Shown piece by piece: positions 8,134 to 56,664 of a DNA stretch of 64,000 nucleotides; the stretch's first letter is position 1; every line of letters starts with the position of its first letter. Made by a program: the position numbers and the translations under genes. The DNA is taken from the IMG/VR virus record IMGVR_UViG_3300020172_001601, positions 186,001 to 250,000 of that record. One strand, given 5' to 3'. Under the pieces are notes generated by a model. It ran no database searches. It saw only the letters and a program-made list of their open reading frames with translations, and was not told the origin of the DNA.

Positions 8134-8161
8134 TGAACCAAAGCGATTTTCGCTCTCTAGG
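8134..8161 (+). promoter_or_regulatory. class II motif
   Basis: TGAACC-N13-CTCTCTAGG. Confidence 0.6.
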
Positions 8162-8201
8162 TTTGTGAACACTCTTTTCACAACTCACCGAGAGGTCCAT
8201 C

Positions 8202-8525
8202 ATGTCTACTGATCGTTCCGTTCCAGACGGCGGTATTAAGGTTGGTCAAGGTGCCACTTATGGCATCGGCAGCGACCGCTACCCGTATACCGTCATTGAA
8301 GTCTCAAGCCCAACTCGTGTTGTGGTTCAGGCCGACAATTATCGGCGAACCGACAATAATGGGTTCTCCGAGTCTCAGACCTACGAATACACCCCTAACC
8401 CGGATGCTTGCCAAACCATCGTGACTCGTCGTAAAGACGGTCGCTGGCGAAAGAAGGGCGATACCAAGGGTGGCGGCGTATTTTCGTTCCACGGTCGAAA
8501 TGCCTACCAAGACCCCAGCTTCTAG
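8202..8525 (+). CDS. phage hypothetical protein (ends YQDPSF)
   Basis: GAGAGG SD, 107 aa. Confidence 0.8.
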   Translation: MSTDRSVPDGGIKVGQGATYGIGSDRYPYTVIEVSSPTRVVVQADNYRRTDNNGFSESQTYEYTPNPDACQTIVTRRKDGRWRKKGDTKGGGVFSFHGRNAYQDPSF

Positions 8526-8542
8526 TCAATTTGGAAAATACC

Positions 8543-8588
8543 AGAGAGGCGACGTGAACTAAACTCACGTTCGCCTCTCTTGGTTTTT
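8543..8588 (+). terminator. hairpin plus T-tract overlapping a class II motif
   Basis: AGAGAGGCGA..TCGCCTCTCT stem then TGGTTTTT. Confidence 0.55.
8555..8583 (+). promoter_or_regulatory. class II motif
   Basis: TGAACT-N14-CTCTCTTGG. Confidence 0.7.
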
Positions 8589-8621
8589 GTGGACAGCACA
8601 ATACTCCAAAAAGGCAATACC

Positions 8622-9248
8622 ATGTCGAATGTAACGAAACAATTCGTTCTTGCGGGTCGTTCGATCTTCACTATTGAAATCCCCGAAGGCTACCGAGCCG
8701 AACATAATCTCAAGCCACACTACACTTTCCGAGTGGACCATAAGGCCCCGGAAGGCAAGTGGAAGGAAACGTGGTTCGTCAAGTACCTTACCGGGTCTGA
8801 CAATACTCGTGACTACTCCTATCTCGGCCTATTGAATGTCGAGAACGGACAGGTTCGGACTACTGCCAAGAGCAAGTTGAACGACAACAATCTTGTTGTG
8901 AAATTGCTCAATCGCACCTTGGCTCTTATTTGGGCCGGTGATGTAAACCCCATGACCGAAAAGGGGTTCGGGCTTCACCATGAGGGTCGATGTGGCAAGT
9001 GTGGTCGGGTATTGACCACGCCAGAAAGCGTTCAGCGAGGCATTGGTCCAGAATGCTGGATCAATATGAATGGTGGGCATTATCCTCATTTAGCTGTCAA
9101 AGGCGAATTTGAGGATCAGGCCCGCCAGGAAATGGAAGCCGAAGATCGTGAAGAACAACGGGCTGAAGACGGTGAATATGAGGCCGATATTGCCGAGCGT
9201 GAGGCCGTTCGGAATGCTTACTTGCATCTTTCTAACGGAACCGTGTGA
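8622..9248 (+). CDS. DUF6011-domain phage protein
   Basis: GRCGKCGRVLTTPESVQRGIGPEC. Confidence 0.75.
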   Translation: MSNVTKQFVLAGRSIFTIEIPEGYRAEHNLKPHYTFRVDHKAPEGKWKETWFVKYLTGSDNTRDYSYLGLLNVENGQVRTTAKSKLNDNNLVVKLLNRTLALIWAGDVNPMTEKGFGLHHEGRCGKCGRVLTTPESVQRGIGPECWINMNGGHYPHLAVKGEFEDQARQEMEAEDREEQRAEDGEYEADIAEREAVRNAYLHLSNGTV

Positions 9249-9817
9249 TGGACGAAGACGAATTCATCTTTGGATATGACAACGACAATCCTTATTATGC
9301 CATTCATGATTATGCTCGAAGGAATGGCTACGGCAAGTATAAGCGTCCGGTCATTCGCAGTGAAGACGCTGTTCTTGAAACCTACACGAATTGGAATTCG
9401 CCACAGGCCGATAAAGAGCGAACCATCTTCGGCGACAAGGAAGCCGATCTGTTCTACAACTATTCAGATCGCCTAGCTCAATGGGACTACGACAAGGATC
9501 GCCGGGCCAATGAATATGCAGCGTTAGTGGCACAGCCAAAAACCGCTAAGTATTTCACTGCCATGTTGTCGTATTTTCACGACGGGGCTGAAGTATCTCT
9601 CCGGCATATTGTTGCTGGCTGCAATCGCTCAAATGGTTTTCCGTATTTGGTTTACGGATACAAGTATACGACAAAGCCAGAAGATGCTGGTCGCCTTGCT
9701 GAATACGACAAGATTCGGCTGGGCAGGACCGCAGCACTGGAACAGGCAAAAACAGAATTCACTGCCAAGTTCGATGAAGCGATGGCAGACGTTTTGAAAA
9801 ATACCAATTCGGCTTGA
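9245..9817 (+). CDS. hypothetical protein
   Basis: GTGA-coupled 190-aa ORF. Confidence 0.75.
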   Translation: MMDEDEFIFGYDNDNPYYAIHDYARRNGYGKYKRPVIRSEDAVLETYTNWNSPQADKERTIFGDKEADLFYNYSDRLAQWDYDKDRRANEYAALVAQPKTAKYFTAMLSYFHDGAEVSLRHIVAGCNRSNGFPYLVYGYKYTTKPEDAGRLAEYDKIRLGRTAALEQAKTEFTAKFDEAMADVLKNTNSA

Positions 9818-9843
9818 ACCAATAGCGTATTTGGTTCTCTAGG
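9815..9843 (+). promoter_or_regulatory. class II motif
   Basis: TGAACC-N14-TTCTCTAGG. Confidence 0.65.
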
Positions 9844-9887
9844 TGTCTGTAACGAACTTAACCCCTTCAGTTTCTCGGAGAATGGTC

Positions 9888-11015
9888 ATGTCGCAGCGAG
9901 TTGTCAATTACACGGCTGGTGAAAAGGTTGAAGAATTGGTGGCTCTTGGCGATATTACCGTCAGCCACAATCCTCGTGCTTCTCTTCGTGGTGTTCTCGA
10001 TCTCTTCCACAGCGACGGTAGTGCGAGCCAGTCGCCGGAAACTCGGCAGGCATTCGTCTCGTATATGAAGGAAGAACACCCGGAAATTGACGGCCTTCGT
10101 CATTCCATCGAAGAACACGGTCTGCTTCAGCCGCCAGTGGTTCGTGCCTTCCGTGCCAAGCAGGATGGTGAATATGTCCAACGCTATGGCATCGTATTGG
10201 GCGAAGGGCGTATTCTTTCTTACGCTCTGACCGAAGCGATTACCGGCGTGGCTCAAAAGGTTCGTGTCCGTATTGAATCTCGTCTCGGCGTCGATGCCGC
10301 TTTCGAGCAGGGTTTGGCCGAAAACCTTGACCGCAACGACATGAACCCCGTCGATCTGGCGACGGCATTCCACGAGATGTTGACAATCCGCATCAATCCG
10401 GCTACAAAGTCCCCCGAAGTAAATGGGGAACCCAACCCGCTGTATTCTTCTGACAGCCCGAAGGGTCGCCCATATACGCTCAAGGAACTGGCCGAACGTG
10501 TCAATAAGACATATTGGTGGGTTCGGGATCACGAAGCGATTTCGTACCTCCCGGATAACCTGAAGTCACAGTGTATCAAGTCGTGGCAGTCGGGCAAGCG
10601 CAATGTCACCCGGTTCTGCAAGTTGGGATTGAAGTACAAGGCTCAGGTCACGGGACAGCCGGAAGAAACCGGGCTTGACAGCCAGACTGGAACAAACGAT
10701 ACTGTTGTCGCAAATGACGGAACCACGACGCAACTTGTCGGAACTTCGTCGGAAACAACCCAGGTTACGCAGCTTACCGCTGCCGTGGAAACTTCGATTT
10801 CCCTCGAACCTGCACAACGTCGTCGTGTCCTTAGTCTGAAGTCGGTGGTGGGACTGTTCGACGGAACGGCATTGGAAAACAAGGAGCGGCTGGCAACGCT
10901 GGCTGAAGTGATGGGAATCACGCTTGAAGAAGCACTGACCGAACGAGATTTACGTCTCGCTAATCAGGCCGATACCCAGGCTCGCAAGCAGCAGCGACAA
11001 CTGGCAACTGCTTGA
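9888..11015 (+). CDS. ParB/RepB/Spo0J family protein
   Basis: NPRA, LRHSIEEHGLLQPPVVR, GEGR, AENLDRNDMNPVD, HTH YTLKELAERVNKT; GGAG SD 7 nt before ATG 9888. Confidence 0.8.
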   Translation: MSQRVVNYTAGEKVEELVALGDITVSHNPRASLRGVLDLFHSDGSASQSPETRQAFVSYMKEEHPEIDGLRHSIEEHGLLQPPVVRAFRAKQDGEYVQRYGIVLGEGRILSYALTEAITGVAQKVRVRIESRLGVDAAFEQGLAENLDRNDMNPVDLATAFHEMLTIRINPATKSPEVNGEPNPLYSSDSPKGRPYTLKELAERVNKTYWWVRDHEAISYLPDNLKSQCIKSWQSGKRNVTRFCKLGLKYKAQVTGQPEETGLDSQTGTNDTVVANDGTTTQLVGTSSETTQVTQLTAAVETSISLEPAQRRRVLSLKSVVGLFDGTALENKERLATLAEVMGITLEEALTERDLRLANQADTQARKQQRQLATA

Positions 11016-11033
11016 AATAAACCAAGAGAGCGC

Positions 11034-11062
11034 TGAACCAAACGGCATCGGCGCTCTCTTGG
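11034..11062 (+). promoter_or_regulatory. class II motif inside a 14-bp perfect inverted repeat (11020-11064), upstream of sigma gene
   Basis: AACCAAGAGAGCGC-TGAACC...-GCGCTCTCTTGGTT. Confidence 0.75.
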
Positions 11063-11089
11063 TTCATAGGATGACCGAACTTAATCAGG

Positions 11090-12145
11090 ATGAATCCCCA
11101 ACCGTCAAAGGAGAAGATCGTGGACTTTCAAGAAATTCCTTACGTCAAGTTGTCAGGTGGCCAGAAGAAGAAAGCCCTCGAAATTCTTGGTCGTGGAAAC
11201 GTCCTCTTGAAGAAGTGGGCTGCGTTCTTCCCACCGAAGAAGTATCGCCTGTTTCGCAACGCAGTGATGGAAGGCAGCACGAACCCTCAGCACGATGGCA
11301 AGGCGGCGATCCCGTCCAATATGCTGAAAGAGTTCCACTCGGACTTACCGTTCATGACGGCGATCCGTCACAACAAATACGATGATCTCGACGGTCGTTC
11401 TGTCGAACAGGCGATCCTCGAAGGGTTCAGCGCTCTCGCCAAACGGCACGCCCGCAAGTGGTCACTCGAAGGTGATCCGGTCGGATTGACCAAGCAAGAC
11501 TTCCTACAGGAAGCCTACATGCAGGTCATCGAAGCGATGTACTCGTGGATGCCCGAACACAATGTCGATATTTCGACGTTCATTTGGGTGTCGTTGAAGA
11601 ACCGGATGAGCAATGTCGTCAACCAACAGGGCAATATGCTCTGTCCGTTGACCAACTCCGACTTGGAGTTGATGAGCCGATTCGAGCAGACGAAGCGTGG
11701 TATGCCACAGTATGTCACGTTCGATCAGATCATCAACCAACTTGGGTTGTCGGCTGAAGAAGGGAAGCATCTGAATACGCTGTTGACTCGTGTATTCGCC
11801 GAGAATCAGTTGGGTGGTCAACAGGGCGATCAGCACGACGATATGAGCGCCACGGGCAACGATTACACCGGGCATCGTGTTGGTGTGGATCGTGAGTCGG
11901 AAACCGAAACCGTTCTGCAAGAGCAGCACGTCTTCGATACTCTGAGCCGGGCTGGACTGTCGGTACTGGAACGACAAGTGATTGAAGCGGCGATGGAACC
12001 ATTCCACGGATGGCAGACTGAATTCGCCAAGACACACATCAATCCGGCTACCAACAAGCCATACTCACGAATGAGAATCACACAGGTTCTCGAAATGGCA
12101 CGAGAAAAGGTCGCAAAGACCTTAGAGCGACAAGAAGCGGCCTAA
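11090..12145 (+). CDS. sigma70-family RNA polymerase sigma factor
   Basis: Region 2-like DFLQEAYMQVIEAMYSW..ISTFIWVSLKNRM; region 4-like LSVLERQVI..YSRMRITQVLEMAREKV; alternative GTG start 11120 with AAGGAG SD. Confidence 0.85.
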   Translation: MNPQPSKEKIVDFQEIPYVKLSGGQKKKALEILGRGNVLLKKWAAFFPPKKYRLFRNAVMEGSTNPQHDGKAAIPSNMLKEFHSDLPFMTAIRHNKYDDLDGRSVEQAILEGFSALAKRHARKWSLEGDPVGLTKQDFLQEAYMQVIEAMYSWMPEHNVDISTFIWVSLKNRMSNVVNQQGNMLCPLTNSDLELMSRFEQTKRGMPQYVTFDQIINQLGLSAEEGKHLNTLLTRVFAENQLGGQQGDQHDDMSATGNDYTGHRVGVDRESETETVLQEQHVFDTLSRAGLSVLERQVIEAAMEPFHGWQTEFAKTHINPATNKPYSRMRITQVLEMAREKVAKTLERQEAA

Positions 12146-12164
12146 CCGATGATGGGTCAAAGAG

Positions 12165-12193
12165 AAAGCCGGGGATAAAACCCCGGCTTTTTT
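12165..12193 (+). terminator. intrinsic terminator
   Basis: AAAGCCGGGG-ATAAAA-CCCCGGCTTT TTT. Confidence 0.9.
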
Positions 12194-12202
12194 ATTGCGC
12201 CG

Positions 12203-12231
12203 TGAACTAAAGAGAGGTTTGACTCTCTAGG
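12203..12231 (+). promoter_or_regulatory. class II motif, likely leaderless mRNA
   Basis: TGAACT-N14-CTCTCTAGG, ATG 5 nt later. Confidence 0.7.
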
Positions 12232-12236
12232 ATTTT

Positions 12237-12929
12237 ATGAACTACCAAATCATCACCGACGAAGCCAAGCTGGACGAATTCATCAGCTTCCTGCCCGATA
12301 TTGAAGACACAGAGGTTTACTACCTCTGTCTATTCGGTCGGCACAAGTATGCTGCTGAGTTTCCCAATACAAAAGACAGTGGGCAACTGGCTCGTATTGC
12401 TTCTCGTAAGAGTGATCTCAAAGAGAAGATTCGTCGGCTGGAATCCCCGCTGGGTTCTTTCTCACGGGACGGTGCTGTGGCTCCGCAGGAAGCATTGGCT
12501 GTCTATATCGGCCTGAACCCCAGGTCGCTTATTCAGGCCAATAAGAAGCTATTGGTTGAATTGGCGACTCGTATTGCCGAAGGCGATCTGAGTTTCAATC
12601 CGATCTCTGCCGCAACCACCGAAATTCATCGTGCCGTTTCTCGTAAGTTCTTTGTGGACTTCGACTACGATCATGTTGAGCCTGCTGATTATCTTCCCAA
12701 AATCAAGGAAATTCTGCCTGCCGGGGCTTATAAAGTCCTGAAAACACGGGGCGGTTTTCACCTGATTATTGAATTGGCGAAGATGAATAAGCCTCTCAAG
12801 AAGGATTGGCATAAGCTATTGGCTTCTCTGCCAAATTGTGATGTTCGAGGGTCTAAGAATCTGACCCCGGTTCCCGGATGTACACAGGGAGGTTTCACGC
12901 CGTATTTTGTCGCCTTGAACCAAGAGTGA
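12237..12929 (+). CDS. hypothetical protein with AEP primase-like motifs
   Basis: FFVDFDYD (hhhDhD) and KTRGGFHL (sxH-type) motifs. Confidence 0.45.
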   Translation: MNYQIITDEAKLDEFISFLPDIEDTEVYYLCLFGRHKYAAEFPNTKDSGQLARIASRKSDLKEKIRRLESPLGSFSRDGAVAPQEALAVYIGLNPRSLIQANKKLLVELATRIAEGDLSFNPISAATTEIHRAVSRKFFVDFDYDHVEPADYLPKIKEILPAGAYKVLKTRGGFHLIIELAKMNKPLKKDWHKLLASLPNCDVRGSKNLTPVPGCTQGGFTPYFVALNQE

Positions 12930-12944
12930 ACTTCGCTCTCTTGG
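12916..12944 (+). promoter_or_regulatory. class II motif
   Basis: TGAACC-N14-CTCTCTTGG in CCAAGAG/CTCTTGG stem. Confidence 0.65.
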
Positions 12945-12945
12945 C

Positions 12946-12952
12946 CTATATA
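12946..12952 (+). promoter_or_regulatory. class III (late-type) motif CTATATA
   Basis: 5 nt before ATG 12958. Confidence 0.6.
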
Positions 12953-12957
12953 CCAAC

Positions 12958-13596
12958 ATGATGACCTTCAAGGAATTTTTAATGGCCGACACCGTAAACC
13001 TTCGGGAAGTTGCCCTGTTTGACTCGCCGTCTTTGTTCAAGGAAATGGCCGTTCTGAACCAGAACGCTATTGCCAAGACTCAGACGGCGATGCAATTCAT
13101 TCATAACAACAATATCCCCGGTGTCATTATCGGCGGTATTGCCGTCGCCAACTATACCCATGACCGGGCGCTGACCCCGGACGTGGATTTTTTGACGCCC
13201 AATATCGCTGGTTTGAAGACCCTGCTACAACAGCAGAATATTCCTTTCCAGCCATTAGCTTCCAGTGGTGAGTTTGGTGGTATCTATGTTCCGTCGCTCG
13301 ATGCCGACTTCTTGGACGTGTCCGAGGGCAATGTCGGATTGAACCGTTATATCATGCAGACCGCTACGACTGCCAAAATTGGTGGCGTGTCTTTCCCGAT
13401 TATTGACGCAGCAGTATTGACCATCATGAAGTTCATTATCGGTCGTGACAAAGATCAGACTGATGCCTTCAAACTGCTGCCTACTGTGCCGAAGGCGACT
13501 CTCAAGACTCACCTGAAGGCGTTGGGTCGATACTTGCCGGAAGACATGAATGCACAAACGATCTGGAGCTATGCCAAGGCAATGTCTCCAGGTTAA
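12958..13596 (+). CDS. nucleotidyltransferase (Pol-beta fold) with capsid-targeting-like N-terminus MMTFKEFL
   Basis: VIIGGIAV..RALTPDVDFL and K..GRDKDQTD motifs. Confidence 0.75.
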   Translation: MMTFKEFLMADTVNLREVALFDSPSLFKEMAVLNQNAIAKTQTAMQFIHNNNIPGVIIGGIAVANYTHDRALTPDVDFLTPNIAGLKTLLQQQNIPFQPLASSGEFGGIYVPSLDADFLDVSEGNVGLNRYIMQTATTAKIGGVSFPIIDAAVLTIMKFIIGRDKDQTDAFKLLPTVPKATLKTHLKALGRYLPEDMNAQTIWSYAKAMSPG

Positions 13597-13597
13597 T

Positions 13598-13626
13598 TTT
13601 ACAGTTCCCTTATTCTGTGGTAAAAT
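13598..13626 (+). promoter_or_regulatory. class I promoter
   Basis: TTTACA-N17-TAAAAT. Confidence 0.75.
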
Positions 13627-13646
13627 CCCAAATAAGGGGCATTGCG

Positions 13647-15617: not shown

Positions 15618-15621
15618 TGTT

Positions 15622-16500: not shown

Positions 16501-16506
16501 TCTGGT

Positions 16507-16535: not shown

Positions 16536-16590
16536 CTGTCGTTTTCCCCTTGAACATAGACATTGGACTATAACCAAAAGACAAGGTGCT

Positions 16591-25313: not shown

Positions 25314-25342
25314 TGAACTTGGGGAACACTTCACTCTCTAGG
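25314..25342 (+). promoter_or_regulatory. class II motif
   Basis: TGAACT-N14-CTCTCTAGG. Confidence 0.7.
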
Positions 25343-25353
25343 CAGTTGACAGA

Positions 25354-27558
25354 ATGAGCAACTCAACCGGAGCCAGTGATATGTTCACCAACAAATTTGC
25401 GGGAACTTGTAATAATCCTACTTGCAAGTGCAAAGTCGAAGCCCAAGCTGGCTTCACTCAGAAAATCAACGGTCGATGGGCCGTATGGTGCAAGCAATGC
25501 GTTCCAGGTCGTATTGAGGCTGCGCCTGCTGTCCGTCGTATTCTTACGACTGATGGAAAGATCATTACGCCGTATGAGCCTCAGAATCTTGATCTTATTC
25601 GGTCAATTCCAGGCGCACGCTGGGAAAAAGACAATCAGTGGTGGAGCGTCAGCCTCGAAATGGCCGACCGTCACCGTCTTTTGGAAGTGGCCGAGAAAAT
25701 TGGCCTCGAAGTTCCTCCGTCTCTTCGTATCATTGAAGTGACCGAGGAAGCACAGAACGCCACCAATGCCGGTCTGTATCCCTTCCAAGTGGAAGGCGTC
25801 AACTTCCTTGCCCACAAGGACAAGGCGTTGCTAGGCGACGAAATGGGCCTTGGTAAGAGTGTTCAGTCACTCATGGGCATTCCTGCTCGTGGTGCTGCCC
25901 TTGTTATTTGCCGTGCCGGTCTGAAGTACAACTGGCTCGATGAAGTCAGCAAGTGGCGTCCCGACTTGAAGCCTGTTGTTCTGAACGGTCGCAAGAGCTT
26001 CCGTTGGCCTGCTGCTGGCGAAGTCGTTATCATCAATAACGATATTCTGCCTGAAGAATTCAATACGCCCAAGAAGAACAAGGGCGAAGCAATGCAAGCC
26101 TATTGGGATCGTCTCAAGACGTATCGCAATGGCCTGAAGGAACGTCACCCACAAGCTGCCAGCGTCAACCTTATCGTTGACGAAGCACACGATTACAAGA
26201 ATCGTGATGCTGCACGCAGCCGCAAGGTGAAGGAATTCTCCAAGCTGGCTCGCAAGCTGACTGGTTTGACTGGTTCGCCGTTGACCAATCGTCCTGAAGA
26301 CCTGTTCGGTGTATTGGATGTATTGGGATTAGCAAAAGAAGTGTTCGGAACGTGGGAACGGTTCCAGCTATTGTTCAATGCCTACTCGGAGCGGGTGTGG
26401 ACTGGCAAGGGCTACATTAACAAGATTGTATGGGGTAAGCCTCAGCCTATTGTTCCTGAATTGCTTCGTCGTTCGATGCTTCGTCGTCGCCGTGCCGATG
26501 TATTGCCGGACCTTCCTGCTAAGACCTACACTAACCTGTTGGTCGGGCCGGTTGACCCTGCACTCCAGAAAGCACTGGATGAAATGTGGGAAGAATGGGG
26601 AACCGCTGTTCAAATTGAAGGCGAACTTCCTCCGTTCGAGAAGTTCAGTGAAATTCGTGAAAAGCTGGCCCGCAGTCGGGTCGATGCTATGATCGAATAC
26701 GTTGAAAACGCTGAAGAACAAGACGTTCCTTTGGTGGTGTTCAGCGCTCACTTGGCTCCGCTTGATGCCCTATTGGGTCGTCCGGGGTGGGCAGTGATTA
26801 CTGGTGTGACTTCTCCATTAAAACGTCAAGAAATTGTTCGGGCCTTTCAAGCCGGGCAATTGAAGGGCGTCGGAGTTAGCATCAAGGCTGGTGGTGTTGG
26901 GATTAACCTAACTCACGCTTGGAAGGCGTTGTTTGTTGACCTTGATTGGACTCCTGCTGCCAACTGGCAAGCAGAAGACCGTATTGCTCGTATTGGGCAA
27001 TTGTCCAATAAAGTGGAAATCATTCGCATGGTGAGCGATCACCCACTCGATCTGCATATTCAGAACATGCTGGTCGATAAGATCGACACGATCATCAAGG
27101 CGATTGATTCGTCGGTCCACGGTGAGAAGGTTGAAGTCAAACCCGGCGTACAGGGCGAGACTGAAGAAGAGTTTCAAGCCCGTATTAACAAACTATTGGA
27201 GCGTGCTGAGGCCGACATTAAAGAACGCAAGGCACGAGCCGAGAGTGATCGTAAGATCGCAGCCAAGGGCAAGGTGGGCGTCATCCATAGCCGTGAGAAG
27301 GCACGACTAACGAAGAAGGTATTGCCCCTGACTGCCGAAAGAACCGAAGCTGTTCGTGATTCTTTCAAGTATATGCTGTCCGTTTGTGACGGGGCGCATA
27401 CTTGGGATAACGTCGGCTTCAATAAACCTGACGCATCGGTGGCACACTGGTTGTTGTCGGCTGGTCTGGAAACAGATCAGGAAGTTGAAGCAGCATACTA
27501 TATGCTGACTCGATACCACCGACAGCTTGCTCCCAAGTACCCGGTGCTTTTCAAGTAA
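25354..27558 (+). CDS. SNF2/SWI2-family (SF2) helicase/ATPase
   Basis: GDEMGLGKS, VDEAH, LTGSPLTNRPEDL, QAEDRIARIGQ. Confidence 0.92.
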   Translation: MSNSTGASDMFTNKFAGTCNNPTCKCKVEAQAGFTQKINGRWAVWCKQCVPGRIEAAPAVRRILTTDGKIITPYEPQNLDLIRSIPGARWEKDNQWWSVSLEMADRHRLLEVAEKIGLEVPPSLRIIEVTEEAQNATNAGLYPFQVEGVNFLAHKDKALLGDEMGLGKSVQSLMGIPARGAALVICRAGLKYNWLDEVSKWRPDLKPVVLNGRKSFRWPAAGEVVIINNDILPEEFNTPKKNKGEAMQAYWDRLKTYRNGLKERHPQAASVNLIVDEAHDYKNRDAARSRKVKEFSKLARKLTGLTGSPLTNRPEDLFGVLDVLGLAKEVFGTWERFQLLFNAYSERVWTGKGYINKIVWGKPQPIVPELLRRSMLRRRRADVLPDLPAKTYTNLLVGPVDPALQKALDEMWEEWGTAVQIEGELPPFEKFSEIREKLARSRVDAMIEYVENAEEQDVPLVVFSAHLAPLDALLGRPGWAVITGVTSPLKRQEIVRAFQAGQLKGVGVSIKAGGVGINLTHAWKALFVDLDWTPAANWQAEDRIARIGQLSNKVEIIRMVSDHPLDLHIQNMLVDKIDTIIKAIDSSVHGEKVEVKPGVQGETEEEFQARINKLLERAEADIKERKARAESDRKIAAKGKVGVIHSREKARLTKKVLPLTAERTEAVRDSFKYMLSVCDGAHTWDNVGFNKPDASVAHWLLSAGLETDQEVEAAYYMLTRYHRQLAPKYPVLFK

Positions 27559-27610: not shown

Positions 27611-27823
27611 ATGATTCCGGGCAATTGTCTGGTTTGCGCACTAGCAATCTGGCTAGTGCATGGCGGGGAAATCATTAGGAGTTATCGACCGGGAACGAGA
27701 ATACCGCATTGGCTAGTCAAGTGTCGAGACGGCCTGATTAGGCACTTCACGGTTGAAAAGAACATACTCCCTAAGCCATTTTGCTATCTCGTTTTCCTTG
27801 GCCGATTTGAAAGATCGGGTTGA
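27611..27823 (+). CDS. small hypothetical protein
   Basis: GAGGG SD, 70 aa. Confidence 0.6.
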   Translation: MIPGNCLVCALAIWLVHGGEIIRSYRPGTRIPHWLVKCRDGLIRHFTVEKNILPKPFCYLVFLGRFERSG

Positions 27824-27849
27824 ACCAACCGTGGCGTCTGCTCTCTTGG
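27821..27849 (+). promoter_or_regulatory. class II motif
   Basis: TGAACC-N14-CTCTCTTGG. Confidence 0.7.
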
Positions 27850-27889: not shown

Positions 27890-28201
27890 ATGCCTCAGCA
27901 ACTTGCAGTTCAGCCCGCACGATTCATCAATGCTGAACCCGGTATTCTCCCCTTCGCCGAGGGACCAGTGCCGGTCGTGCTTCTGTCCTTTGGTGCAGAA
28001 GAAGGCCCAATCGAAGATCGAGCCATTGGCATCATTGAAGCTCGTCAGATGGTGATGGACATTTTGGAATCGCTGGCTACGATGGGCGATCCGCTGGCCC
28101 AGGCTATTGGCAGTCAATTCTTCGGACAGGGCAGCGAGGCTCCTGATGACGGTGGCCAATACGACGATGGCTATTCCGACTGTGGCGATTGTGGGCAATA
28201 A
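27890..28201 (+). CDS. hypothetical protein
   Basis: ORF after class II motif. Confidence 0.65.
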   Translation: MPQQLAVQPARFINAEPGILPFAEGPVPVVLLSFGAEEGPIEDRAIGIIEARQMVMDILESLATMGDPLAQAIGSQFFGQGSEAPDDGGQYDDGYSDCGDCGQ

Positions 28202-30702: not shown

Positions 30703-31077
30703 ATGCCAATTGAATTTGAAGATGGCTCGTCGCTTGCTACGGAAGACTGGTTCCGAATTATGTCCGTCATCAAACAACGGGCAAAAGAAGGCAAGCCGAA
30801 GCCTGTTGAGATCAAACAGAACAACGTCACCGTGAAGGTCAAGGGATTCGATCCTGTCGCAACTGGCGGCAAGGTTGTCAGTCCAGAATATGCCAACTAT
30901 ATCGAATCGACACACAATGGATGGAAAGTCCGTGTGTGGCGAAAAGAGGAAGAAGGTGTATATGGCTGCAATTACTTTCAGGGCGAAGACATTCGTTACC
31001 TCGAAGTGCCATTCGGTGATGTTCGGGACGAGAACGGGGTATTCAAATACGCTTCCTCAATCATCGACGATATTTGA
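30703..31077 (+). CDS. hypothetical protein
   Basis: AAGGGA SD. Confidence 0.7.
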   Translation: MPIEFEDGSSLATEDWFRIMSVIKQRAKEGKPKPVEIKQNNVTVKVKGFDPVATGGKVVSPEYANYIESTHNGWKVRVWRKEEEGVYGCNYFQGEDIRYLEVPFGDVRDENGVFKYASSIIDDI

Positions 31078-49600: not shown

Positions 49601-49602
49601 TC

Positions 49603-50979: not shown

Positions 50980-51178
50980 CGAACGACTACAGCGGGGACG
51001 ACTGGCTTTTGCAGCCAGTTGTCTCAAGCTGGCACGACAAGAACTGAAGGATCATGGACGTGAGTTCATGAAGCCCGGCGAAGACGTTTATGACTCTGCC
51101 GTGCAATATGGCGGGAAGATTAACCTGACGAGAGATGAAATCATCGAGGCCGAAAAACTCTCCAAGAGGAAGAAATGA
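50969..51178 (+). CDS. hypothetical protein
   Basis: Packed ORF. Confidence 0.6.
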   Translation: MTNDERLQRGRLAFAASCLKLARQELKDHGREFMKPGEDVYDSAVQYGGKINLTRDEIIEAEKLSKRKK

Positions 51179-51801: not shown

Positions 51802-52136
51802 GCGAATCAAGATTCATGTTCAAAGGCATTGAGTGCGTCTTCAGCGAGAAGGCCGAGGCTATCGTCCCATCTGACGACGCCAAGACATTTTTGCTGGAGA
51901 CTTTCTTTTCTTATGAACCCATTAACTCCATTCGATGGGTAGATGCCAAATCTTTGGATGACGCCAGAAAAGATGATGGATCGTTGCCGATGTATACGAT
52001 TGGCAACGGTGAAAGCGAATTGCTGTTATGGCCTCTTTTGAATGATGGCGATCTTTGGATGGGAATTGAATCTGCTGAAGAAAGACCTGATTTGATTGGA
52101 GAACTTTTTGGGGGTAGATTAAAAACAAAAAGTTAA
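51798..52136 (+). CDS. hypothetical protein
   Basis: GTGA-coupled. Confidence 0.6.
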   Translation: MSESRFMFKGIECVFSEKAEAIVPSDDAKTFLLETFFSYEPINSIRWVDAKSLDDARKDDGSLPMYTIGNGESELLLWPLLNDGDLWMGIESAEERPDLIGELFGGRLKTKS

Positions 52137-52187
52137 CTATAATATCGGTGGCGTCTTAACCCTAGAGAAGAAGAAGGAGATAGAAAG

Positions 52188-52940
52188 ATGCAAGAAGAAG
52201 TAAAACCTGACACCACCAAAGAAATGAAGTCAAATCTCGGTGGCTCCCCCAACGTCGTATTCTCGTTTGATACGACCGGCTCGATGAACCCCTGTATTCA
52301 ACAGGTGCGTCAAAAACTGCGTGATCTCGTTGAAATGATGAGTGCTGATATTCCCGGCCTCAAGATCGGTTTGATTGCCCACGGCGATTATTGTGATGGT
52401 GACAATGCCATTGCATTCCTCGATCTGACTGATGACCTCGAAAAGATCATGACATTCATCAATACTACGCCCAATACAAGCGGCGGTGATGCTCCTGAGT
52501 GCTATGAATACGCTCTCCAAACGGCAAGGCAAATGTCCTGGCCCAAGGAAGGCGGCAGCGTAGTTCTCATTGGCGATGATGAGCCACACGAAGTTAATCC
52601 CAACAATATCAATTGGCGGGACGAAGTTCGGCAAATGCTTGAACTCAATGTTAAAGTGTTTCCGATGCAGTGTCTCTTCCGAGACAGCCGTGCTAAGGTC
52701 AACGCTTTTTGGGAAGAAGTTTCCCAAATTAGCGAAACTCCACTGTTGATGCTTGAATCGTTCGGCGATAGCGCCAATACTCTTGAAGCTGTTGCATATG
52801 CTTCATCGGGCGGTGCAGCATATGACACCTATAAGTCCAAGTTCGCTACGGAAGTCACTAGCGGTCTGCGAGCATGTGCCACCAGCAATCTTGTGGACAA
52901 TCAGTCCAAGCTGGAGGCGTTTGCAAAAAGGGGCGAGTAA
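52188..52940 (+). CDS. von Willebrand factor A (MIDAS) domain protein
   Basis: FSFDTTGSM, GDYCD, GGDAPECYE, LIGDDEPH; AAGGAG SD. Confidence 0.88.
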   Translation: MQEEVKPDTTKEMKSNLGGSPNVVFSFDTTGSMNPCIQQVRQKLRDLVEMMSADIPGLKIGLIAHGDYCDGDNAIAFLDLTDDLEKIMTFINTTPNTSGGDAPECYEYALQTARQMSWPKEGGSVVLIGDDEPHEVNPNNINWRDEVRQMLELNVKVFPMQCLFRDSRAKVNAFWEEVSQISETPLLMLESFGDSANTLEAVAYASSGGAAYDTYKSKFATEVTSGLRACATSNLVDNQSKLEAFAKRGE

Positions 52941-53209
52941 TGAGCATGAGAGAACAGGTAGAAGAAACGCTCAAAGAGGAAAATCCTGATGCTTTGTTTC
53001 TTGATGGTTTCGATGAAGCCATCATCGGCATTGCCAGACGAGCAAACCTTGCTGTCGTTGCATACAACGAATCGGCCTGCATTGATATTTTGATGAAAGA
53101 TCAAGGCATGACCGAGGACGACGCCTGGGAATATTTTGGATTCAATGTCCAAGGTGCCTGGATGGGCGAACACACGCCAGTTCTCATCAGCTATGTTCGA
53201 TGGGCATAG
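52940..53209 (+). CDS. phage hypothetical protein
   Basis: DGFDEAIIG..DDAWEYFGFNVQGAWMGEHTP. Confidence 0.75.
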   Translation: MSMREQVEETLKEENPDALFLDGFDEAIIGIARRANLAVVAYNESACIDILMKDQGMTEDDAWEYFGFNVQGAWMGEHTPVLISYVRWA

Positions 53210-53236
53210 CCCACTTCGCCACAATTCGATCTTCTT

Positions 53237-53267
53237 AAACCACCCGTGTACACCACGGGTGGTTTTT
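53237..53267 (+). terminator. intrinsic terminator
   Basis: AAACCACCCGTG-TACAC-CACGGGTGGTTT TT. Confidence 0.85.
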
Positions 53268-53269
53268 GT

Positions 53270-53298
53270 TTTACAGCCCATTATTTTCGTGGTAAAAT
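53270..53298 (+). promoter_or_regulatory. class I promoter
   Basis: TTTACA-N17-TAAAAT. Confidence 0.75.
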
Positions 53299-53319
53299 CA
53301 GCTTTTCGGAATATCGGGT

Positions 53320-53348
53320 TGAACTCCATGAAGAGTTTGCTCTCTAGG
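53320..53348 (+). promoter_or_regulatory. class II motif
   Basis: TGAACT-N14-CTCTCTAGG. Confidence 0.7.
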
Positions 53349-53349
53349 G

Positions 53350-53586
53350 ATGCAGCAGATGCAATCACCACCACAAGCAGGCGAAGTTTGGATCAACATC
53401 CACACTAGCTCTAAGGTGACGATTCAACGTGTAGAAGAAGTTGCTCAAGCCAGGGGTGGGTTGGTTGTCGTATACGACCAACCCAATTGGAAGAGTCAAC
53501 GATGCAATATTGAAACTTTCAATGTCAATTGGAAGCGTCACAAACCAGCCAGCAAGTGGTTCTTGGGAGCCTTCAATTCGGAGTGA
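53350..53586 (+). CDS. hypothetical protein
   Basis: ORF after tandem promoters. Confidence 0.6.
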   Translation: MQQMQSPPQAGEVWINIHTSSKVTIQRVEEVAQARGGLVVVYDQPNWKSQRCNIETFNVNWKRHKPASKWFLGAFNSE

Positions 53587-53590
53587 TAAA

Positions 53591-54601
53591 ATGGGCATGT
53601 TCAGTTGGAAGTGCAAAGGCTGTGGCCACGAACTCATTGAACGAGAATTAGTCCGTTTGAACGGACAGGTTCAAGAGTATGATGGCTATGGTGGATCAGC
53701 CGCCAATAGTGGCGATTATGATCCTTCTGCATGGCACAACCGCTGTTACAAGAAGGCATCCCGTCCACACCAGCTTGAAGAGTCCGCAAGCAGCCACGCC
53801 CCGAACCAAGGATTCGGCCCATCGAAGCTAGAGTTTTTGTCTGGATACGATGAAAATGTTCCTGTCGGTGAATTCACCGTTATGGTTTATGCAAGTCATC
53901 ATACGGAACAGGAAAGCCGTCAATTTGACTTTTACTACACCAACAACGGAAAGCTGGAAGACCAGCGTGAATATCAGGAGCAATACGACAAGGCTGGCGA
54001 AGATGCCGAATTCGACTACGACGCATGGCTGAAACTGTCAGATGCCGACCGGGAAATCGCACACAAAGAACATCAAGACAAGCTCCGATTGTCTGTTGAG
54101 GTATTGTTAGGCTCGGCTATGCCTCGAATCAATGCCAAGACCTTTGCATCATTGCAAGAGGCAATCGACGCAGTGGACGCTGTGTTGCCAGAACTCCCCG
54201 CTGAATTAGGTGGCGAATACGACTTAACCATTTATGGAAAGCAGGGCAAGATTGAAGGCGCTGTTTACCAACGCTCTGTTAGTCGAAAATACGACCGCAC
54301 TGGCGAGAATTGGGTCAAGTTGGACGTATTGGAAGTCGAAGAATCATATCGTCTCGGCTCAGACAAAGCTGGCCTTGCCGATGAACAGTTGGATTTGGCA
54401 ATAGAACGATTCAACGAAGCCCAACAAGCGCTCAATGATGCTTCCGAGGCACTTGGTCGTGCTGCACAACCGTTCGTCAACACAGACGACAAAGAAAAGC
54501 TACATGAATTGGCTGATCGTCTGCCAAAGGCGTGGTCAGGAGTTCGTAGGGTTTACGAAAAGCTAATTGGGCTTGAACCTGACAAAGAGCAAACTCTCTA
54601 G
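53591..54601 (+). CDS. hypothetical protein
   Basis: 336-aa ORF; N-terminal CKGC. Confidence 0.75.
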   Translation: MGMFSWKCKGCGHELIERELVRLNGQVQEYDGYGGSAANSGDYDPSAWHNRCYKKASRPHQLEESASSHAPNQGFGPSKLEFLSGYDENVPVGEFTVMVYASHHTEQESRQFDFYYTNNGKLEDQREYQEQYDKAGEDAEFDYDAWLKLSDADREIAHKEHQDKLRLSVEVLLGSAMPRINAKTFASLQEAIDAVDAVLPELPAELGGEYDLTIYGKQGKIEGAVYQRSVSRKYDRTGENWVKLDVLEVEESYRLGSDKAGLADEQLDLAIERFNEAQQALNDASEALGRAAQPFVNTDDKEKLHELADRLPKAWSGVRRVYEKLIGLEPDKEQTL

Positions 54602-54632
54602 GAGATTGCAAACCAACAATAGGAGTAGCGAA

Positions 54633-54938
54633 ATGCCTTCAGTATACGAAATGGAACATGAGCCAGAAGTTGCCAAAGTCCTTGATGGGATGCGGCTGAA
54701 AATGGCTGAAGTGTTCGGCGTTACTGTCACAGGCAATCGCTGCACAGTTCGATGGACTATGGATGGGCAGTTGGTCGATGTTCACATGATTATTGAGAAC
54801 GTCACCACGCCCGATGAACATCGCCAACATATGGAGCAATACGCTCGTATGGAGGCCCTGCTCAAGAAATACGAAAAGAAGTTTCCCGATCTCCGGGAAG
54901 AACTCGCTCACGCTGAAACTGGTGAATGGAGCAAGTGA
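54633..54938 (+). CDS. hypothetical protein
   Basis: AGGAG SD. Confidence 0.7.
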   Translation: MPSVYEMEHEPEVAKVLDGMRLKMAEVFGVTVTGNRCTVRWTMDGQLVDVHMIIENVTTPDEHRQHMEQYARMEALLKKYEKKFPDLREELAHAETGEWSK

Positions 54939-55660
54939 TGAAAGACACAATTGAAGTTGGAATCTACTCGCACAATTTGTCAATTTCATTTCATGAAGTG
55001 GAAGGCGAAGAATATCAAGTAAATTTCTACGCCAGTCTAATGGGCTATTTAGGAGAAAGCGACGACGACGTTCAAGTTGCTCATGTGGAAGGAACCATTG
55101 CCACATTGCCTCACAGGGTTGGAAAAGGAATAAACAGAATATTTCCATTAGAAGTTGGAGAGCATTTTTATGCTTATCCGGCACTGTCTCCATTGTATCT
55201 TGCAAACGGTCATTTGAGTGACCGCATGTGGGCAAAAGTTGGTGGAGATGAGTTTTCAACAAGAGCAATCTATGTTGATAAAGTGGTAGTAGAAAAAGGC
55301 TTCACTTCCACCAATCTGGGAGCGAAGTTGGTAATCGCTGCCATGAAACTCATTTACAAAATTCTTCAGGAAGAACTGCCAGTCATTGCCATTCTTGGCA
55401 GTTACGATGGATATGCCGAACGTGGAAAATCGGTAAGAAAATATTTCAAGAGGCATGGGTTCAAACCACTCAAGCCGAAAGAAGAATTGGCTCATTTTTT
55501 GCCAATATCGACTATCAGAATGGCACCTAGCATTGAAGATGTTCAAGTTTTTTTTAGCGAACAAAAGAAAAACAGAAAGCTAAAGAAGAAGTCGCTTACT
55601 TTGCGAGAGCAGCTTGCTCTTGCAAATGCAAATTCAAAAGGAGCAAGTGATGAAACGTAG
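54938..55660 (+). CDS. GNAT-fold-like protein
   Basis: IYVDKVVVEKGFTSTNLGAKLV..RKYFKRHGF; tentative. Confidence 0.5.
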   Translation: MKDTIEVGIYSHNLSISFHEVEGEEYQVNFYASLMGYLGESDDDVQVAHVEGTIATLPHRVGKGINRIFPLEVGEHFYAYPALSPLYLANGHLSDRMWAKVGGDEFSTRAIYVDKVVVEKGFTSTNLGAKLVIAAMKLIYKILQEELPVIAILGSYDGYAERGKSVRKYFKRHGFKPLKPKEELAHFLPISTIRMAPSIEDVQVFFSEQKKNRKLKKKSLTLREQLALANANSKGASDET

Positions 55661-56096
55661 CAAGCCCTACATCGACCCCGAAAGAATCGAAGAACCACCT
55701 GAAGTGGACCTGGCGCAACTGCGTCAACTCACTGAGCAGGCCATTCAGCGGGGCAAATGGAAAGAAGAAAAACGACTGGCTGACATTAAGGCCGAAGAAG
55801 AACGCAAGGCCAAACGTGACCAGTTGTTCGCAGCTACGGTATTGGCCGAGTTTCCCGACAAGTGTGAGAAGGAAGCAGGTCGAGGCCGATCCCACGCCAT
55901 CATCATGGGTCTGAAATACGACCGAGATTACACCTACCAAGGCAGTAATTTCAATACGTTGTCGCATGACCGACTTACAGGCCCAGGAGCAATAGTCTGG
56001 AACTACCTGCAAGCAGCCGGACTCAAACCCACTATTGAGTATTGGCACGACGGCATGGGCATGGACAGTGGCTTTAACATCGTAGTTCATTGGTAA
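55650..56096 (+). CDS. hypothetical protein
   Basis: AAGGAG SD. Confidence 0.7.
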   Translation: MKRSKPYIDPERIEEPPEVDLAQLRQLTEQAIQRGKWKEEKRLADIKAEEERKAKRDQLFAATVLAEFPDKCEKEAGRGRSHAIIMGLKYDRDYTYQGSNFNTLSHDRLTGPGAIVWNYLQAAGLKPTIEYWHDGMGMDSGFNIVVHW

Positions 56097-56107
56097 GGTA
56101 CTAATCC

Positions 56108-56632
56108 ATGTGCATGACTCAACGTGTTGCTTCTGAAAAGCTAGTCTCTTTGGTGCCGCAGAGTGCCTACAAGGTGTTCTCCCGCACCAAAGATGGACAG
56201 CTTCAGTCTGTCTTTGTCCCGACCTTCAAAGCGGGATTGATCTATCCACCCAATCAACGCATTCGAGTGGATACTGAAGACGCCACGTTCTTCGCCTTCG
56301 AGAACTTCAAGAACGCAATATCCATTGCCCGGCAAGGCCGCAAGCGATGGAATATGGTCAACGGCGACCTAATCGTATTGCCTGTCACAATGCACGAAAT
56401 CGTCGCAACAGGCAAGTACCACGTCCCCAGCGAAGACATTCAGTGCTTGGATGGGTATTACCCAGCCTTCGAGTCCAAAGAAATCGAAGTTCACGACTCT
56501 GAGGAAAATCGCAACGCCTTCTACGACGCTGTATTGTCGCAGTGGTTGAAGACAGCACAATATGGCATGTCCAAGATCGACAAAGAGGCTTTTGCCGCTC
56601 GTGTTCCACACTTGGCCGAAGTTTTCAAATAG
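56108..56632 (+). CDS. hypothetical protein
   Basis: Packed ORF. Confidence 0.7.
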   Translation: MCMTQRVASEKLVSLVPQSAYKVFSRTKDGQLQSVFVPTFKAGLIYPPNQRIRVDTEDATFFAFENFKNAISIARQGRKRWNMVNGDLIVLPVTMHEIVATGKYHVPSEDIQCLDGYYPAFESKEIEVHDSEENRNAFYDAVLSQWLKTAQYGMSKIDKEAFAARVPHLAEVFK

Positions 56633-56635
56633 CCT

Positions 56636-56664
56636 TGAACCTGAGAGCTAAGTCGCTCTCTTGG
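56636..56664 (+). promoter_or_regulatory. class II motif
   Basis: TGAACC-N14-CTCTCTTGG with GAGAGC/GCTCTC stem. Confidence 0.7.

What the first reader, a model, noticed from the sequence alone, without database searches (positions are those of the whole stretch)
8134..56664. Second promoter class clustered around, and upstream of, a phage sigma factor
Seen: TGAAC(C/T)-N14-(C/T)TCTCT(A/T)GG at 8134 (N13), 8555, 9815, 11034, 12203, 12916, 25314, 27821, 53320 and 56636. Six of ten lie within 8.1-13 kb around the sigma70-family gene, and one is directly upstream of it. Read as -35 TGAAC(C/T) / 17 nt / -10 TCT(A/T)G, this is alternative (ECF-like) sigma geometry; at 12237 the ATG falls at the expected +1. 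Downstream genes include ParB, the sigma itself, the AEP-like protein and the SNF2 helicase. Inference: a self-amplifying middle regulon driven by the phage sigma, or by a hijacked host ECF sigma.
Basis: partly seen in the sequence, partly recalled or inferred. Interest (0 to 1): 0.78.

Follow-up and report, generated by a model that had tools for sequence, protein, structure and literature searches.

The report
Alternative-sigma promoter class in a huge phage
The repeated two-box motif is a real, sharply defined promoter class of an uncultivated freshwater jumbo phage that has four sigma-factor genes and at least four promoter classes, but the neighbouring sigma gene is shown only to be a target of the class, not its reader.

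Summary
Shuffles give none. The whole 340-kb phage contig has 24 copies. All are on the + strand and intergenic, 2-60 nt upstream of a start codon in most cases, one 10 nt before a tRNA, one just after a strong terminator.

Relatives keep the two boxes at orthologous intergenic sites while spacers and flanks drift, and the boxes change lineage by lineage. It is best read as a promoter for host core RNA polymerase plus a phage-encoded alternative sigma.

- The window's sigma (11120-12145) is a real but very divergent sigma with a full-length sigma2-sigma3-sigma4 fold. It is not ECF-type.
- The genome has three more sigma genes, one of them ECF-like and behind an early sigma-70-type promoter.
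- It also has three other promoter classes.
- The window's sigma gene sits in a module driven only by this motif, with no early promoter.

I therefore favour a cascade (early sigma reads the motif and switches on this sigma) over self-amplification. This is a new member of a known kind, the phage sigma cascade.

The parts
8134..8161 (+). Class B promoter (N13 spacer), 41 nt upstream of gene 8202-8525
   Evidence: A relative in run X5 has a T inserted in the spacer, which restores N14.
8555..8583 (+). Class B promoter upstream of the DUF6011 gene (8622-9248). It is embedded in the hairpin 8538-8590.
9815..9843 (+). Class B promoter upstream of the ParB-like gene (9888-11015)
11034..11062 (+). 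Class B promoter 58 nt upstream of the sigma gene. It is embedded in the hairpin 11018-11066.
11120..12145 (+). Divergent sigma-70-family gene ('sig4', 341 aa, GTG start with AGGAG 6 nt upstream). Full-length sigma2-sigma3-sigma4 architecture.
   Evidence: Pfam Sigma70_r2 scores only 18 bits, below the cut-off. A family profile hits SigA regions 2-3 at E 6e-4. The AF2 model has pLDDT 78.7. Foldseek top 20 hits are full-length sigma A, probability 1.0. 57 homologues, 93-39% identical, from metagenome contigs of 1-600 kb.
12168..12194 (+). Intrinsic terminator after the sigma gene, directly before the next class B promoter
   Evidence: dG -23.3 kcal/mol, z -5.9, followed by a U run
12203..12231 (+). 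Class B promoter. The ATG of gene 12237-12929 lies 5 nt after the motif, so the mRNA would be (near-)leaderless.
   Evidence: The L005 orthologue has 8 nt there.
12916..12944 (+). Class B promoter upstream of gene 12982-13596
25314..25342 (+). Class B promoter upstream of the SNF2-family helicase gene (25381-27558)
27821..27849 (+). Class B promoter, 119 nt upstream of the small gene 27968-28201
53270..53348 (+). Tandem pair: class A (sigma-70-like, TTTACA-N14-TGGTAAAAT) at 53270, then class B at 53320-53348
54574..54602 (+).
56636..56664 (+). Class B promoter 19 nt upstream of gene 56683-57063, with a CAGGAGA ribosome site between them
8538..8590 (+). Stable hairpin that engulfs the 8555 promoter. 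The 3' arm is the -10 box, the loop holds the -35 box, and a U-rich tail follows. Probably a terminator overlapping the promoter.
   Evidence: dG -28.4 kcal/mol, z -6.7. Orthologous hairpins with different arm sequences occur in L005 and L006.
11018..11066 (+). Very stable hairpin that engulfs the sigma gene's promoter
   Evidence: dG -32 kcal/mol, z -8.9. Orthologous hairpins occur in L005 and L006, z -3.9 and -6.0.

Best explanation
The motif is the promoter of a discrete 'middle' transcription class (class B) of a huge phage that has no RNA polymerase gene on this contig and redirects the host core enzyme with its own sigma factors.

How it reads: tTGAAC is the -35 element. YTCTCTWGG covers roughly -14 to -6. 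Transcription would start 5-8 nt after the motif.

Genes it drives: a ParB-like protein, an SNF2 helicase, an NAD-ligase operon, ThiF-like, PARP-like and AAA proteins, the tRNA array, an amber-suppressor tRNA, and the divergent sigma gene in the window.

I favour an early-expressed phage sigma, best candidate the ECF-like 220-aa sigma at genome 62411-63073, which has a sigma-70-type promoter. On this view the window's sigma is a product of class B and goes on to direct a later class. That would be a cascade of the SPO1 or T4 kind.

Shown: the motif's discreteness, strand and position rules; its conservation and lineage-specific drift in relatives; four sigma genes; four promoter classes; the fold of the window's sigma.

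Inferred: that it is a promoter, where transcription starts, the timing, and which sigma reads it.
For: Promoter:
- 24 sites, all + strand and all intergenic, with none expected by chance.
- Spacing to the ribosome site and start codon is short. One site ends 10 nt before a tRNA.
- One site lies directly after a strong terminator.
- It forms tandems with class A and class C promoters.
- Between this phage and L005, identity is 0.83 in the -35 box and 0.94 in the -10 box, against 0.52 in the spacer and 0.40 upstream.

Phage-encoded reader:
- No T7-like polymerase or RpoB hit on the contig. The T7-like model's control search hit nothing anywhere, so only the RpoB result counts.
- Four Sigma70_r2 hits.
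- The boxes change together within each relative. L005 has TAGGTCGAACC...CTCTCTWGG, L006/L024 has CGAACC...TCTCTTG, and L008 has GTGAACCAAA...CCTCTTTGT. These phages range from 33 to 48% GC.

Cascade rather than self-drive:
- The 7.9-13.6 kb module has six class B promoters and no strong sigma-70-type promoter on the + strand. The only + strand consensus matches there are inside genes. The genes upstream of it are divergent.
- The same layout occurs in L005, L006 and L007.
- The ECF-like sigma has a canonical class A promoter 45 nt upstream here, and also in L025, L039 and G001.
- It scores 21.0 bits against a 21.1 cut-off for Pfam Sigma70_ECF.
- A GAAC -35 element is the ECF hallmark (established knowledge).
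Against: - No transcript data exist. No RNA run was listed, so no start site is shown.
- Nothing ties the ECF-like sigma to this motif beyond its type and timing.
- The 9-bp downstream box is longer than a typical ECF -10 element. It would fit a sigma with region 3, which the window's sigma has.
- The densest cluster of sites surrounds the window's sigma, and the site upstream of it is kept in every relative that has the motif.
- In L008 that gene has a class A promoter as well as class B, as expected for kick-start plus self-amplification.
- The contig is only about 69% complete, so further factors may be missing.
Confidence: 0.4

Rival explanations
1. One reading: the window's sigma (11120-12145) itself reads class B, so the class is a self-amplifying regulon centred on its own gene.
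For: - Six of 24 sites lie within 4.8 kb around the gene (P = 2e-5).
- The site upstream of the gene is kept in L005-L008.
- L008 has class A plus class B upstream of the gene.
- The sigma has regions 2, 3 and 4, which suits a long -10 block.
- Its recognition helix SRMRITQ is invariant in the relatives that keep the GAACC(A)AA core.
- It has weak RpoH-like matches. The motif loosely resembles sigma-32 promoters, TTGAAA plus a C/T-rich extended -10 (my own knowledge).
Against: - There is no early promoter for the gene in this phage, L005, L006 or L007. Transcription from upstream cannot read into the module, because the upstream genes are divergent.
- G001 has a 41%-identical homologue with the same recognition helix, but no GAACC-type motif upstream of the orthologous genes on its 90-kb fragment.
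- Known phage cascades place the next sigma's gene under the previous promoter class (established knowledge).
Confidence: 0.3
2. A host alternative sigma of the RpoE/AlgU (ECF) type reads the motif, and the phage exploits a host stress regulon.
For: GAACY, 17 nt, TCTWG is close to the published RpoE/AlgU consensus GAACTT-N16/17-TCTGA (my own knowledge). The geometry was checked.
Against: - The nine downstream bases are almost invariant, which is unlike cellular ECF regulons.
- The flanks of both boxes change together between phages whose proteins are about 88% identical. This phage has aTCGnnyTGAACC and L005 has TAGGTCGAACC.
- Relatives range from 33 to 48% GC, which suggests different hosts.
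- The phage carries four sigma genes of its own.
- The host is unknown.
Confidence: 0.12
3. Sigma appropriation: host sigma-70 (or the RpoD-like phage sigma at genome 155954-156901) reads the site with the help of a phage activator bound at the TGAACC box, as T4 MotA/AsiA does.
For: tTGAAC lies where TTGACA would and shares 4 of 6 bases. A conserved TCG lies further upstream.
Against: There is no TAnnnT -10 hexamer, and the variable W position is A or T. No MotA or AsiA homologue was looked for.
Confidence: 0.08
4. Not a promoter: the motif is an operator, a terminator part or an RNA-level element.
For: Two sites lie inside strong conserved hairpins. Hairpin potential is mildly enriched over all sites: mean longest stem 5.2 against 4.3 in shuffles.
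Against: - Most sites have no hairpin.
- The two boxes are asymmetric, at a fixed distance, with free spacers.
- The sites lie at a short, promoter-like distance before ribosome sites, a tRNA and a leaderless start, and after terminators.
Confidence: 0.05

Closest known systems
Bacillus phage SPO1 sigma cascade (gp28 for middle promoters, gp33/34 for late promoters)
   Same: There is no phage polymerase. Successive phage sigmas redirect host core polymerase to sharply conserved, non-sigma-70 promoter classes. The next sigma's gene sits behind the previous class.
   Different: This phage has four sigma-family genes and at least four promoter classes, with different box sequences. The proteins are not detectably related to gp28 or gp34: the PHROG hits are only to generic sigma families, and the window's sigma has none.
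ECF (group 4) sigma promoters, for example RpoE/AlgU GAACTT-N16/17-TCTGA
   Same: AAC in the -35 element, a 16-17 nt spacer, a TCT-type -10 element, and a sigma gene preceded by the motif.
   Different: The downstream box is 9 bp long and almost invariant. The adjacent sigma is not a two-domain ECF protein. No anti-sigma gene is evident.
Sigma-dependent jumbo phages of the T4-like 'group 2' (PMC7824862), with T4 late promoters read by gp55
   Same: Jumbo phages without a polymerase that encode sigma factors. A T4-late-like class (CTAAATA) is present in this genome. PMC1524935 holds that string and the term late promoter.
   Different: Class B is two-part and depends on a -35 element, unlike gp55 promoters. 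A gp55 or gp33 homologue was not searched for.
Coliphage phiEco32 gp36, an ECF-like phage sigma for middle and late promoters
   Same: A phage-encoded divergent sigma made early that switches host polymerase to a phage-specific promoter class (my own knowledge).
   Different: phiEco32 has one sigma and one class with a single -10-like element. This phage has several sigmas and a two-box motif.

Membership tests
Sigma-dependent bacterial promoter (alternative-sigma type) | Two conserved boxes separated by a spacer of fixed length and free sequence | tested here: met
   TGAACY, then N14 (one N13 and one N15), then YTCTCTWGG. Spacer information content is about 0.
Sigma-dependent bacterial promoter (alternative-sigma type) | Oriented with, and just upstream of, transcription units in non-coding DNA | tested here: met
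   All 24 sites are on the + strand, like nearly all the genes, and all 24 are intergenic.
Sigma-dependent bacterial promoter (alternative-sigma type) | Transcripts start a few nt downstream of the -10 box | not testable with these tools
   No RNA run was listed for this sequence. Read laying had only DNA contigs to work with.
Sigma-dependent bacterial promoter (alternative-sigma type) | Conserved as boxes, not as flanks, in related genomes | tested here: met
   Against L005, box identity is 0.83 and 0.94, spacer 0.52, upstream 0.40. Variants occur at orthologous sites in L006, L007, L008 and L024.
ECF-type promoter | AAC in the -35 element and a 16-17 nt spacer | tested here: met
   GAAC is invariant. 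There are 17 nt between TGAACY and TCTWG.
ECF-type promoter | Short -10 element of the CGT/GTC or TCTGA kind | tested here: inconclusive
   TCT is present, but it sits inside a 9-bp invariant block, CTCTCTWGG.
Sigma-70 family (the window's gene 11120-12145) | Region 2 recognisable by sequence | tested here: inconclusive
   Pfam Sigma70_r2 scores 18.2 bits against a cut-off of 24. A profile of 23 homologues hits SigA regions 2-3 in the PDB at E 6e-4.
Sigma-70 family (the window's gene 11120-12145) | Sigma fold | tested here: met
   AF2 model, pLDDT 78.7. Foldseek finds 70 PDB hits at E 1e-3 or better. The 50 listed are nearly all chains of RNA polymerase-sigma complexes, and the best are full-length sigma A at probability 1.0. 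The Atlas neighbours are sigma clusters.
ECF sigma (group 4), for the window's gene | Two-domain protein (sigma2 and sigma4, no sigma3), about 170-220 aa | tested here: not met
   341 aa. The match extends through region 3. The model aligns over about 360 columns to full-length sigma A.
ECF sigma (group 4), for the window's gene | Match to ECF or region 4_2 family models | tested here: not met
   No Sigma70_ECF, r4 or r4_2 hit. Only the superfamily model TIGR02937, at 24.7 bits against a cut-off of 42.9.
Phage sigma cascade | Several phage sigma genes and no phage RNA polymerase | tested here: met
   Four Sigma70_r2 places. No PF00562 hit, with working controls. The PF00940 search also found nothing, but its control hit nothing either. 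The contig is about 69% complete.
Phage sigma cascade | Distinct promoter classes, with a sigma gene behind the preceding class | tested here: met
   Classes A, B, C and D. The ECF-like sigma lies behind class A and the window's sigma behind class B.
Phage sigma cascade | Temporal succession of the classes during infection | not testable with these tools
   No host, no culture and no RNA data.

The most novel reading that the evidence does not exclude
A transcription programme with four or more tiers in an uncultivated phage of more than 340 kb. A sigma family known only from metagenome contigs, some of them hundreds of kb long, with no Pfam or PHROG family of its own, would sit at the hub. 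Some class B promoters would be built into terminator hairpins: the -10 box forms the 3' arm and the -35 box sits in the loop. The same class would switch on an amber-suppressor tRNA. Promoter choice, termination and stop-codon read-through would then be coupled in one module.
Probability: 0.15. Interest if true: 0.7.

Novelty: new member of a known kind. Interest (0 to 1): 0.45.

Why it matters
Huge phages from metagenomes are known to carry sigma genes, but their promoter grammar is almost undescribed because they have no cultured hosts. This contig gives an unusually clean case.
- It has four crisp promoter classes and four sigma genes.
- One class has 24 near-identical sites whose boxes drift lineage by lineage in relatives.
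- That makes the pairing of sigmas with promoters directly testable in vitro, without the host.
- It also offers a set of possibly orthogonal sigma and promoter parts.

If the class B promoters built into hairpins prove functional, they would be a compact design that overlaps a terminator with a promoter.

Tried and rejected
- **RNA evidence.** No RNA run was listed. Read laying on four DNA runs showed only that relatives exist and that the listed indels fall in spacers or flanks. The substitution list was cut, so no footprint was drawn from it.
- **Complex prediction.** The job with the ECF-like sigma, the window's sigma and promoter DNA was not folded. It counts neither for nor against binding.
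- **Cultured relatives.** No megablast hit in the phage collection. By tblastn, only a 595-kb uncultured phage has distant homologues of the window's sigma and the FliA-like sigma, the latter also matching weakly in a few Clostridium, Bacillus and faecal phage records. The ECF-like sigma has no match. That 595-kb phage shows no enrichment of the motif.
- **Telling the sigmas apart by presence or absence.** This failed. The 462-kb and 602-kb relatives carry both the ECF-like sigma and the window's sigma. The 90-kb IMG/VR relative G001 has all four sigmas but no detectable motif class.
- **Recognition helices.** Those of both candidate sigmas are conserved across the relatives. The only difference in the ECF-like sigma between this phage and L005 is Ser to Thr at the start of the helix. 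That is suggestive but not evidence.
- **JGI and ENA contigs** behind L005 and L006 could not be searched whole.
- **TAG recoding.** Reading through TAG adds few long ORFs, so global recoding is rejected.
- **Non-coding stretch after the site at genome 267918.** No meaningful Rfam hit.
- **'AEP-like' label.** No support.


Full report
**The observation**

The pattern TGAACY-N13/14-YTCTCTWGG has 11 exact matches in the window, all on the + strand. One hundred dinucleotide-preserving shuffles gave none.

The window is bases 186001-250000 of a single 340,341-bp virus contig (47.8% GC). It comes from a freshwater metagenome, and CheckV rates it about 69% complete.

Genome-wide the exact pattern has 22 matches. 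A weight matrix built from the 20 N14 sites adds two one-mismatch sites. The 22 sites the matrix finds score 30 or more and almost nothing else reaches 8. There is nothing on the minus strand and nothing in Markov nulls.

All 24 sites are intergenic in a contig that is 85% coding. Six of them lie within 4.8 kb, where 0.54 are expected.

It includes a TCG about 5 nt upstream, A-rich bases after GAACC, and a T-rich pattern after the last G.

**Is it a promoter?**

- Nearly all genes are on the + strand, as are all 24 sites.
- Most sites end 2-60 nt before a start codon, often with CAGGAGA in between.
- At 12237 the ATG begins 5 nt after the motif. The L005 orthologue has 8 nt there.
- The site at genome 181973 ends 10 nt before a tRNA gene.
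- The site at 12203 follows an intrinsic terminator with dG -23.3 kcal/mol and z -5.9.
- Class B sites form tandems with two other promoter-like classes.

Relatives were found through homologues of the neighbouring sigma, and each was checked at orthologous intergenic positions.
- L005 (88% identical sigma) keeps all six sites of the cluster. Box identity is 0.83 and 0.94, against 0.52 in the spacer and 0.40 upstream.
- L006/L024 (75%), L007 (55%) and L008 (49%) keep a GAACC(A/T)AA box and a CTCT-type box at the same places.
- The flanks and the downstream box are altered in a way that is uniform within each genome. L005 has TAGGTCGAACC...CTCTCTWGG, L006 has CGAACC...TCTCTTG, and L008 has GTGAACCAAA...CCTCTTTGT.
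- The most distant relatives, L009 and G001, show no such motif.

This is the behaviour of a promoter that co-evolves with its recognition factor. No RNA run was listed, so start sites are inferred, not shown.

**What reads it?**

No T7-like polymerase or RpoB-like gene was found on the contig. The T7-like model's control search hit nothing anywhere, so only the RpoB result is informative. Four places match Sigma70 region 2:

| Gene | Position | Size | Nearest kind |
|---|---|---|---|
| sig1 | genome 48022-48564 | 180 aa | FliA/WhiG-like |
| sig2 | genome 62411-63073 | 220 aa | ECF-like: Pfam Sigma70_ECF 21.0 bits against a 21.1 cut-off, TIGR02937 |
| sig3 | genome 155954-156901 | 315 aa | RpoD/RpoS-like |
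| sig4 | window 11120-12145 | 341 aa | Only weak matches |

For sig4:
- A profile of 23 homologues matches regions 2-3 of primary sigmas in the PDB at E 6e-4.
- The AlphaFold2 model (pLDDT 78.7) aligns over its whole length to full-length sigma A at probability 1.0.
- Its nearest Atlas neighbours are sigma clusters.

So sig4 is a genuine, very divergent sigma. It has three domains and is not an ECF protein.

**The wider promoter landscape**

| Class | Motif | Copies and place | Likely role |
|---|---|---|---|
| A | TTTACA-N14-TGGTAnAAT | About 50, genome 11-254 kb, 14 in the window | Classical sigma-70 promoter with an extended -10. Presumably early. |
| B | This finding | 24 | See above |
| C | TAGGTCcAgTGTACCCTAGnGGGtgt | 60 on the + strand, genome 265-293 kb, one before almost every small gene there | Unknown reader |
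| D | CTAAATA, then an ATG 2-9 nt later | 13 such CTAAATA-plus-ATG sites, often after terminators, in the regions without A or B | Resembles T4-type late promoters (PMC1524935 holds the string CTAAATA and the term late promoter) |

Classes A and D are also present in the relatives.

sig2 has a canonical class A promoter 45 nt upstream. The same is true in L025, L039 and G001. sig3 lies in an operon that begins at a class A promoter.

sig4 lies in a 5.7-kb module (7.9-13.6 kb) with six class B promoters. The module has no strong sigma-70-type promoter on the + strand; the only consensus matches there lie inside genes. It is bounded upstream by divergent genes. L005, L006 and L007 have the same layout. 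L008 has an added class A promoter.

Class B genes include a ParB-like protein, an SNF2 helicase, an NAD-dependent ligase operon, ThiF-like, PARP-like and AAA proteins, and tRNAs. That is a DNA-metabolism or 'middle' set.

**Weighing the models**

The geometry suits an ECF-type sigma: GAAC, 17 nt, TCT. It also fits the standard -35/-10 frame (tTGAAC at -35 to -30), so a three-domain sigma could read it too.

For a cascade:
- sig4 has no visible kick-start promoter in four of five phages.
- sig2 is early and ECF-like.
- Known phage cascades place the next sigma's gene under the preceding promoter class.

For self-amplification:
- The site density around sig4 is high.
- The site upstream of sig4 is conserved.
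- L008 has the A-plus-B tandem.
- The long -10 block suits a sigma with region 3.

Against a host sigma:
- The motif is almost invariant.
- The boxes shift together within each lineage, even between closely related phages.
- The relatives span 33-48% GC.

I put the cascade at 0.40, self-amplification at 0.30, a host ECF sigma at 0.12, activator-assisted sigma-70 at 0.08, and 'not a promoter' at 0.05. The attempt to model sigma-DNA complexes was not run by the tool and gives no evidence either way.

**Comparison with known systems, and novelty**

Phage sigma cascades are long known: SPO1, T4 and phiEco32. A comparative study of jumbo phages already notes that those without a polymerase encode sigma factors (PMC7824862).

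This is therefore a new member of a known kind. It is notable for the number of sigmas and classes, for the sharpness of the motifs, and for the divergence of sig4, which has no PHROG family.

**An unexpected extra**

Two class B promoters, at 8555 and 11034, lie inside very stable hairpins. The 3' arm is the -10 box. The free energies are -28.4 and -32 kcal/mol, with z -6.7 and -8.9. The orthologous sites in L005 and L006 keep the hairpin with different arm sequences. I read these as terminators that overlap promoters, but this is untested.

Noticed in passing
window 8538-8590 and 11018-11066; L005:7355-7412 and 9896-9946; L006:7365-7420 and 9893-9945: Two class B promoters lie inside strong hairpins. 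The 3' arm is the -10 box, the loop holds the -35 box, and a U-rich tail follows. Relatives keep the hairpins through compensatory changes. They may be terminators overlapping promoters, or a control on the sigma gene's promoter.
   Followed up: partly
genome 265225-292979 (outside the window; window ends at genome 250000): Class C: 60 + strand copies of TAGGTCcAgTGTACCCTAGnGGGtgt, one before almost every small gene in a 28-kb block. The long unbroken motif looks more like a single-subunit polymerase promoter than a sigma promoter, yet no such polymerase was found on the contig. L005's class B sites carry the same TAGGTC hexamer directly 5' of GAACC.
   Followed up: partly
window 5671(+), 7871(-), 7897(+), 20167(+), 61968(+); genome-wide: Class D: CTAAATA followed 2-9 nt later by ATG, often after terminators. 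It resembles a T4-type late promoter driving leaderless mRNAs. A divergent pair lies just upstream of the sigma module. The motif is conserved at orthologous sites in L005-L008.
   Followed up: partly
window 1550, 4135, 13598, 16507, 21541, 24376, 28434, 30651, 39040, 44459, 47739, 53270, 59429, 63548: Class A: TTTACA-N14-TGGTAnAAT, a sigma-70-type promoter with an extended -10 element. There are about 50 genome-wide.
   Followed up: partly
genome 182011-182084 and 182708-182778 (about 4 kb before the window): Two tRNAs with a CUA anticodon (amber suppressors) lie behind a class A plus class B tandem. The contig has 52 tRNA genes. Reading through TAG adds few long ORFs, so there is no global recoding. 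TAG stops are rare in the late-type regions.
   Followed up: partly
window 11063-11119; L005:9943-10000; L006:9940-10000; L008:9930-10000: The 5' leader of the sigma gene is conserved and carries repeats of (C)AGGATGA: two copies here and three in L008. It may be a translational control site.
   Followed up: no
genome 47930-48021; L039:4347-4428; G001 about 30970-31066: The FliA-like sigma gene has a strongly conserved upstream sequence, TATATAATT.ACTG..ACTTTCACTTACTTTC..GGACTTTCAA, even in distant relatives. It fits none of classes A-D.
   Followed up: no
genome 267946-268300: A class B site is followed by about 355 nt with no ORF and no meaningful Rfam match. This may be a non-coding RNA.
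   Followed up: partly
   Followed up: yes
genome 160914-162539, 66768-67538; L024, L025: A PARP-like protein with a WGR domain and a ThiF/E2/JAB-like set lie behind class B sites. One relative (L025) has a TnpB/IS605-family gene inserted next to the ligase operon.
   Followed up: no
L008:9640-9720: Upstream of the sigma gene in this relative, the -10 part of a class B site (AGGTTCATTTCTCTTTGTTC) is repeated three times in tandem.
   Followed up: no
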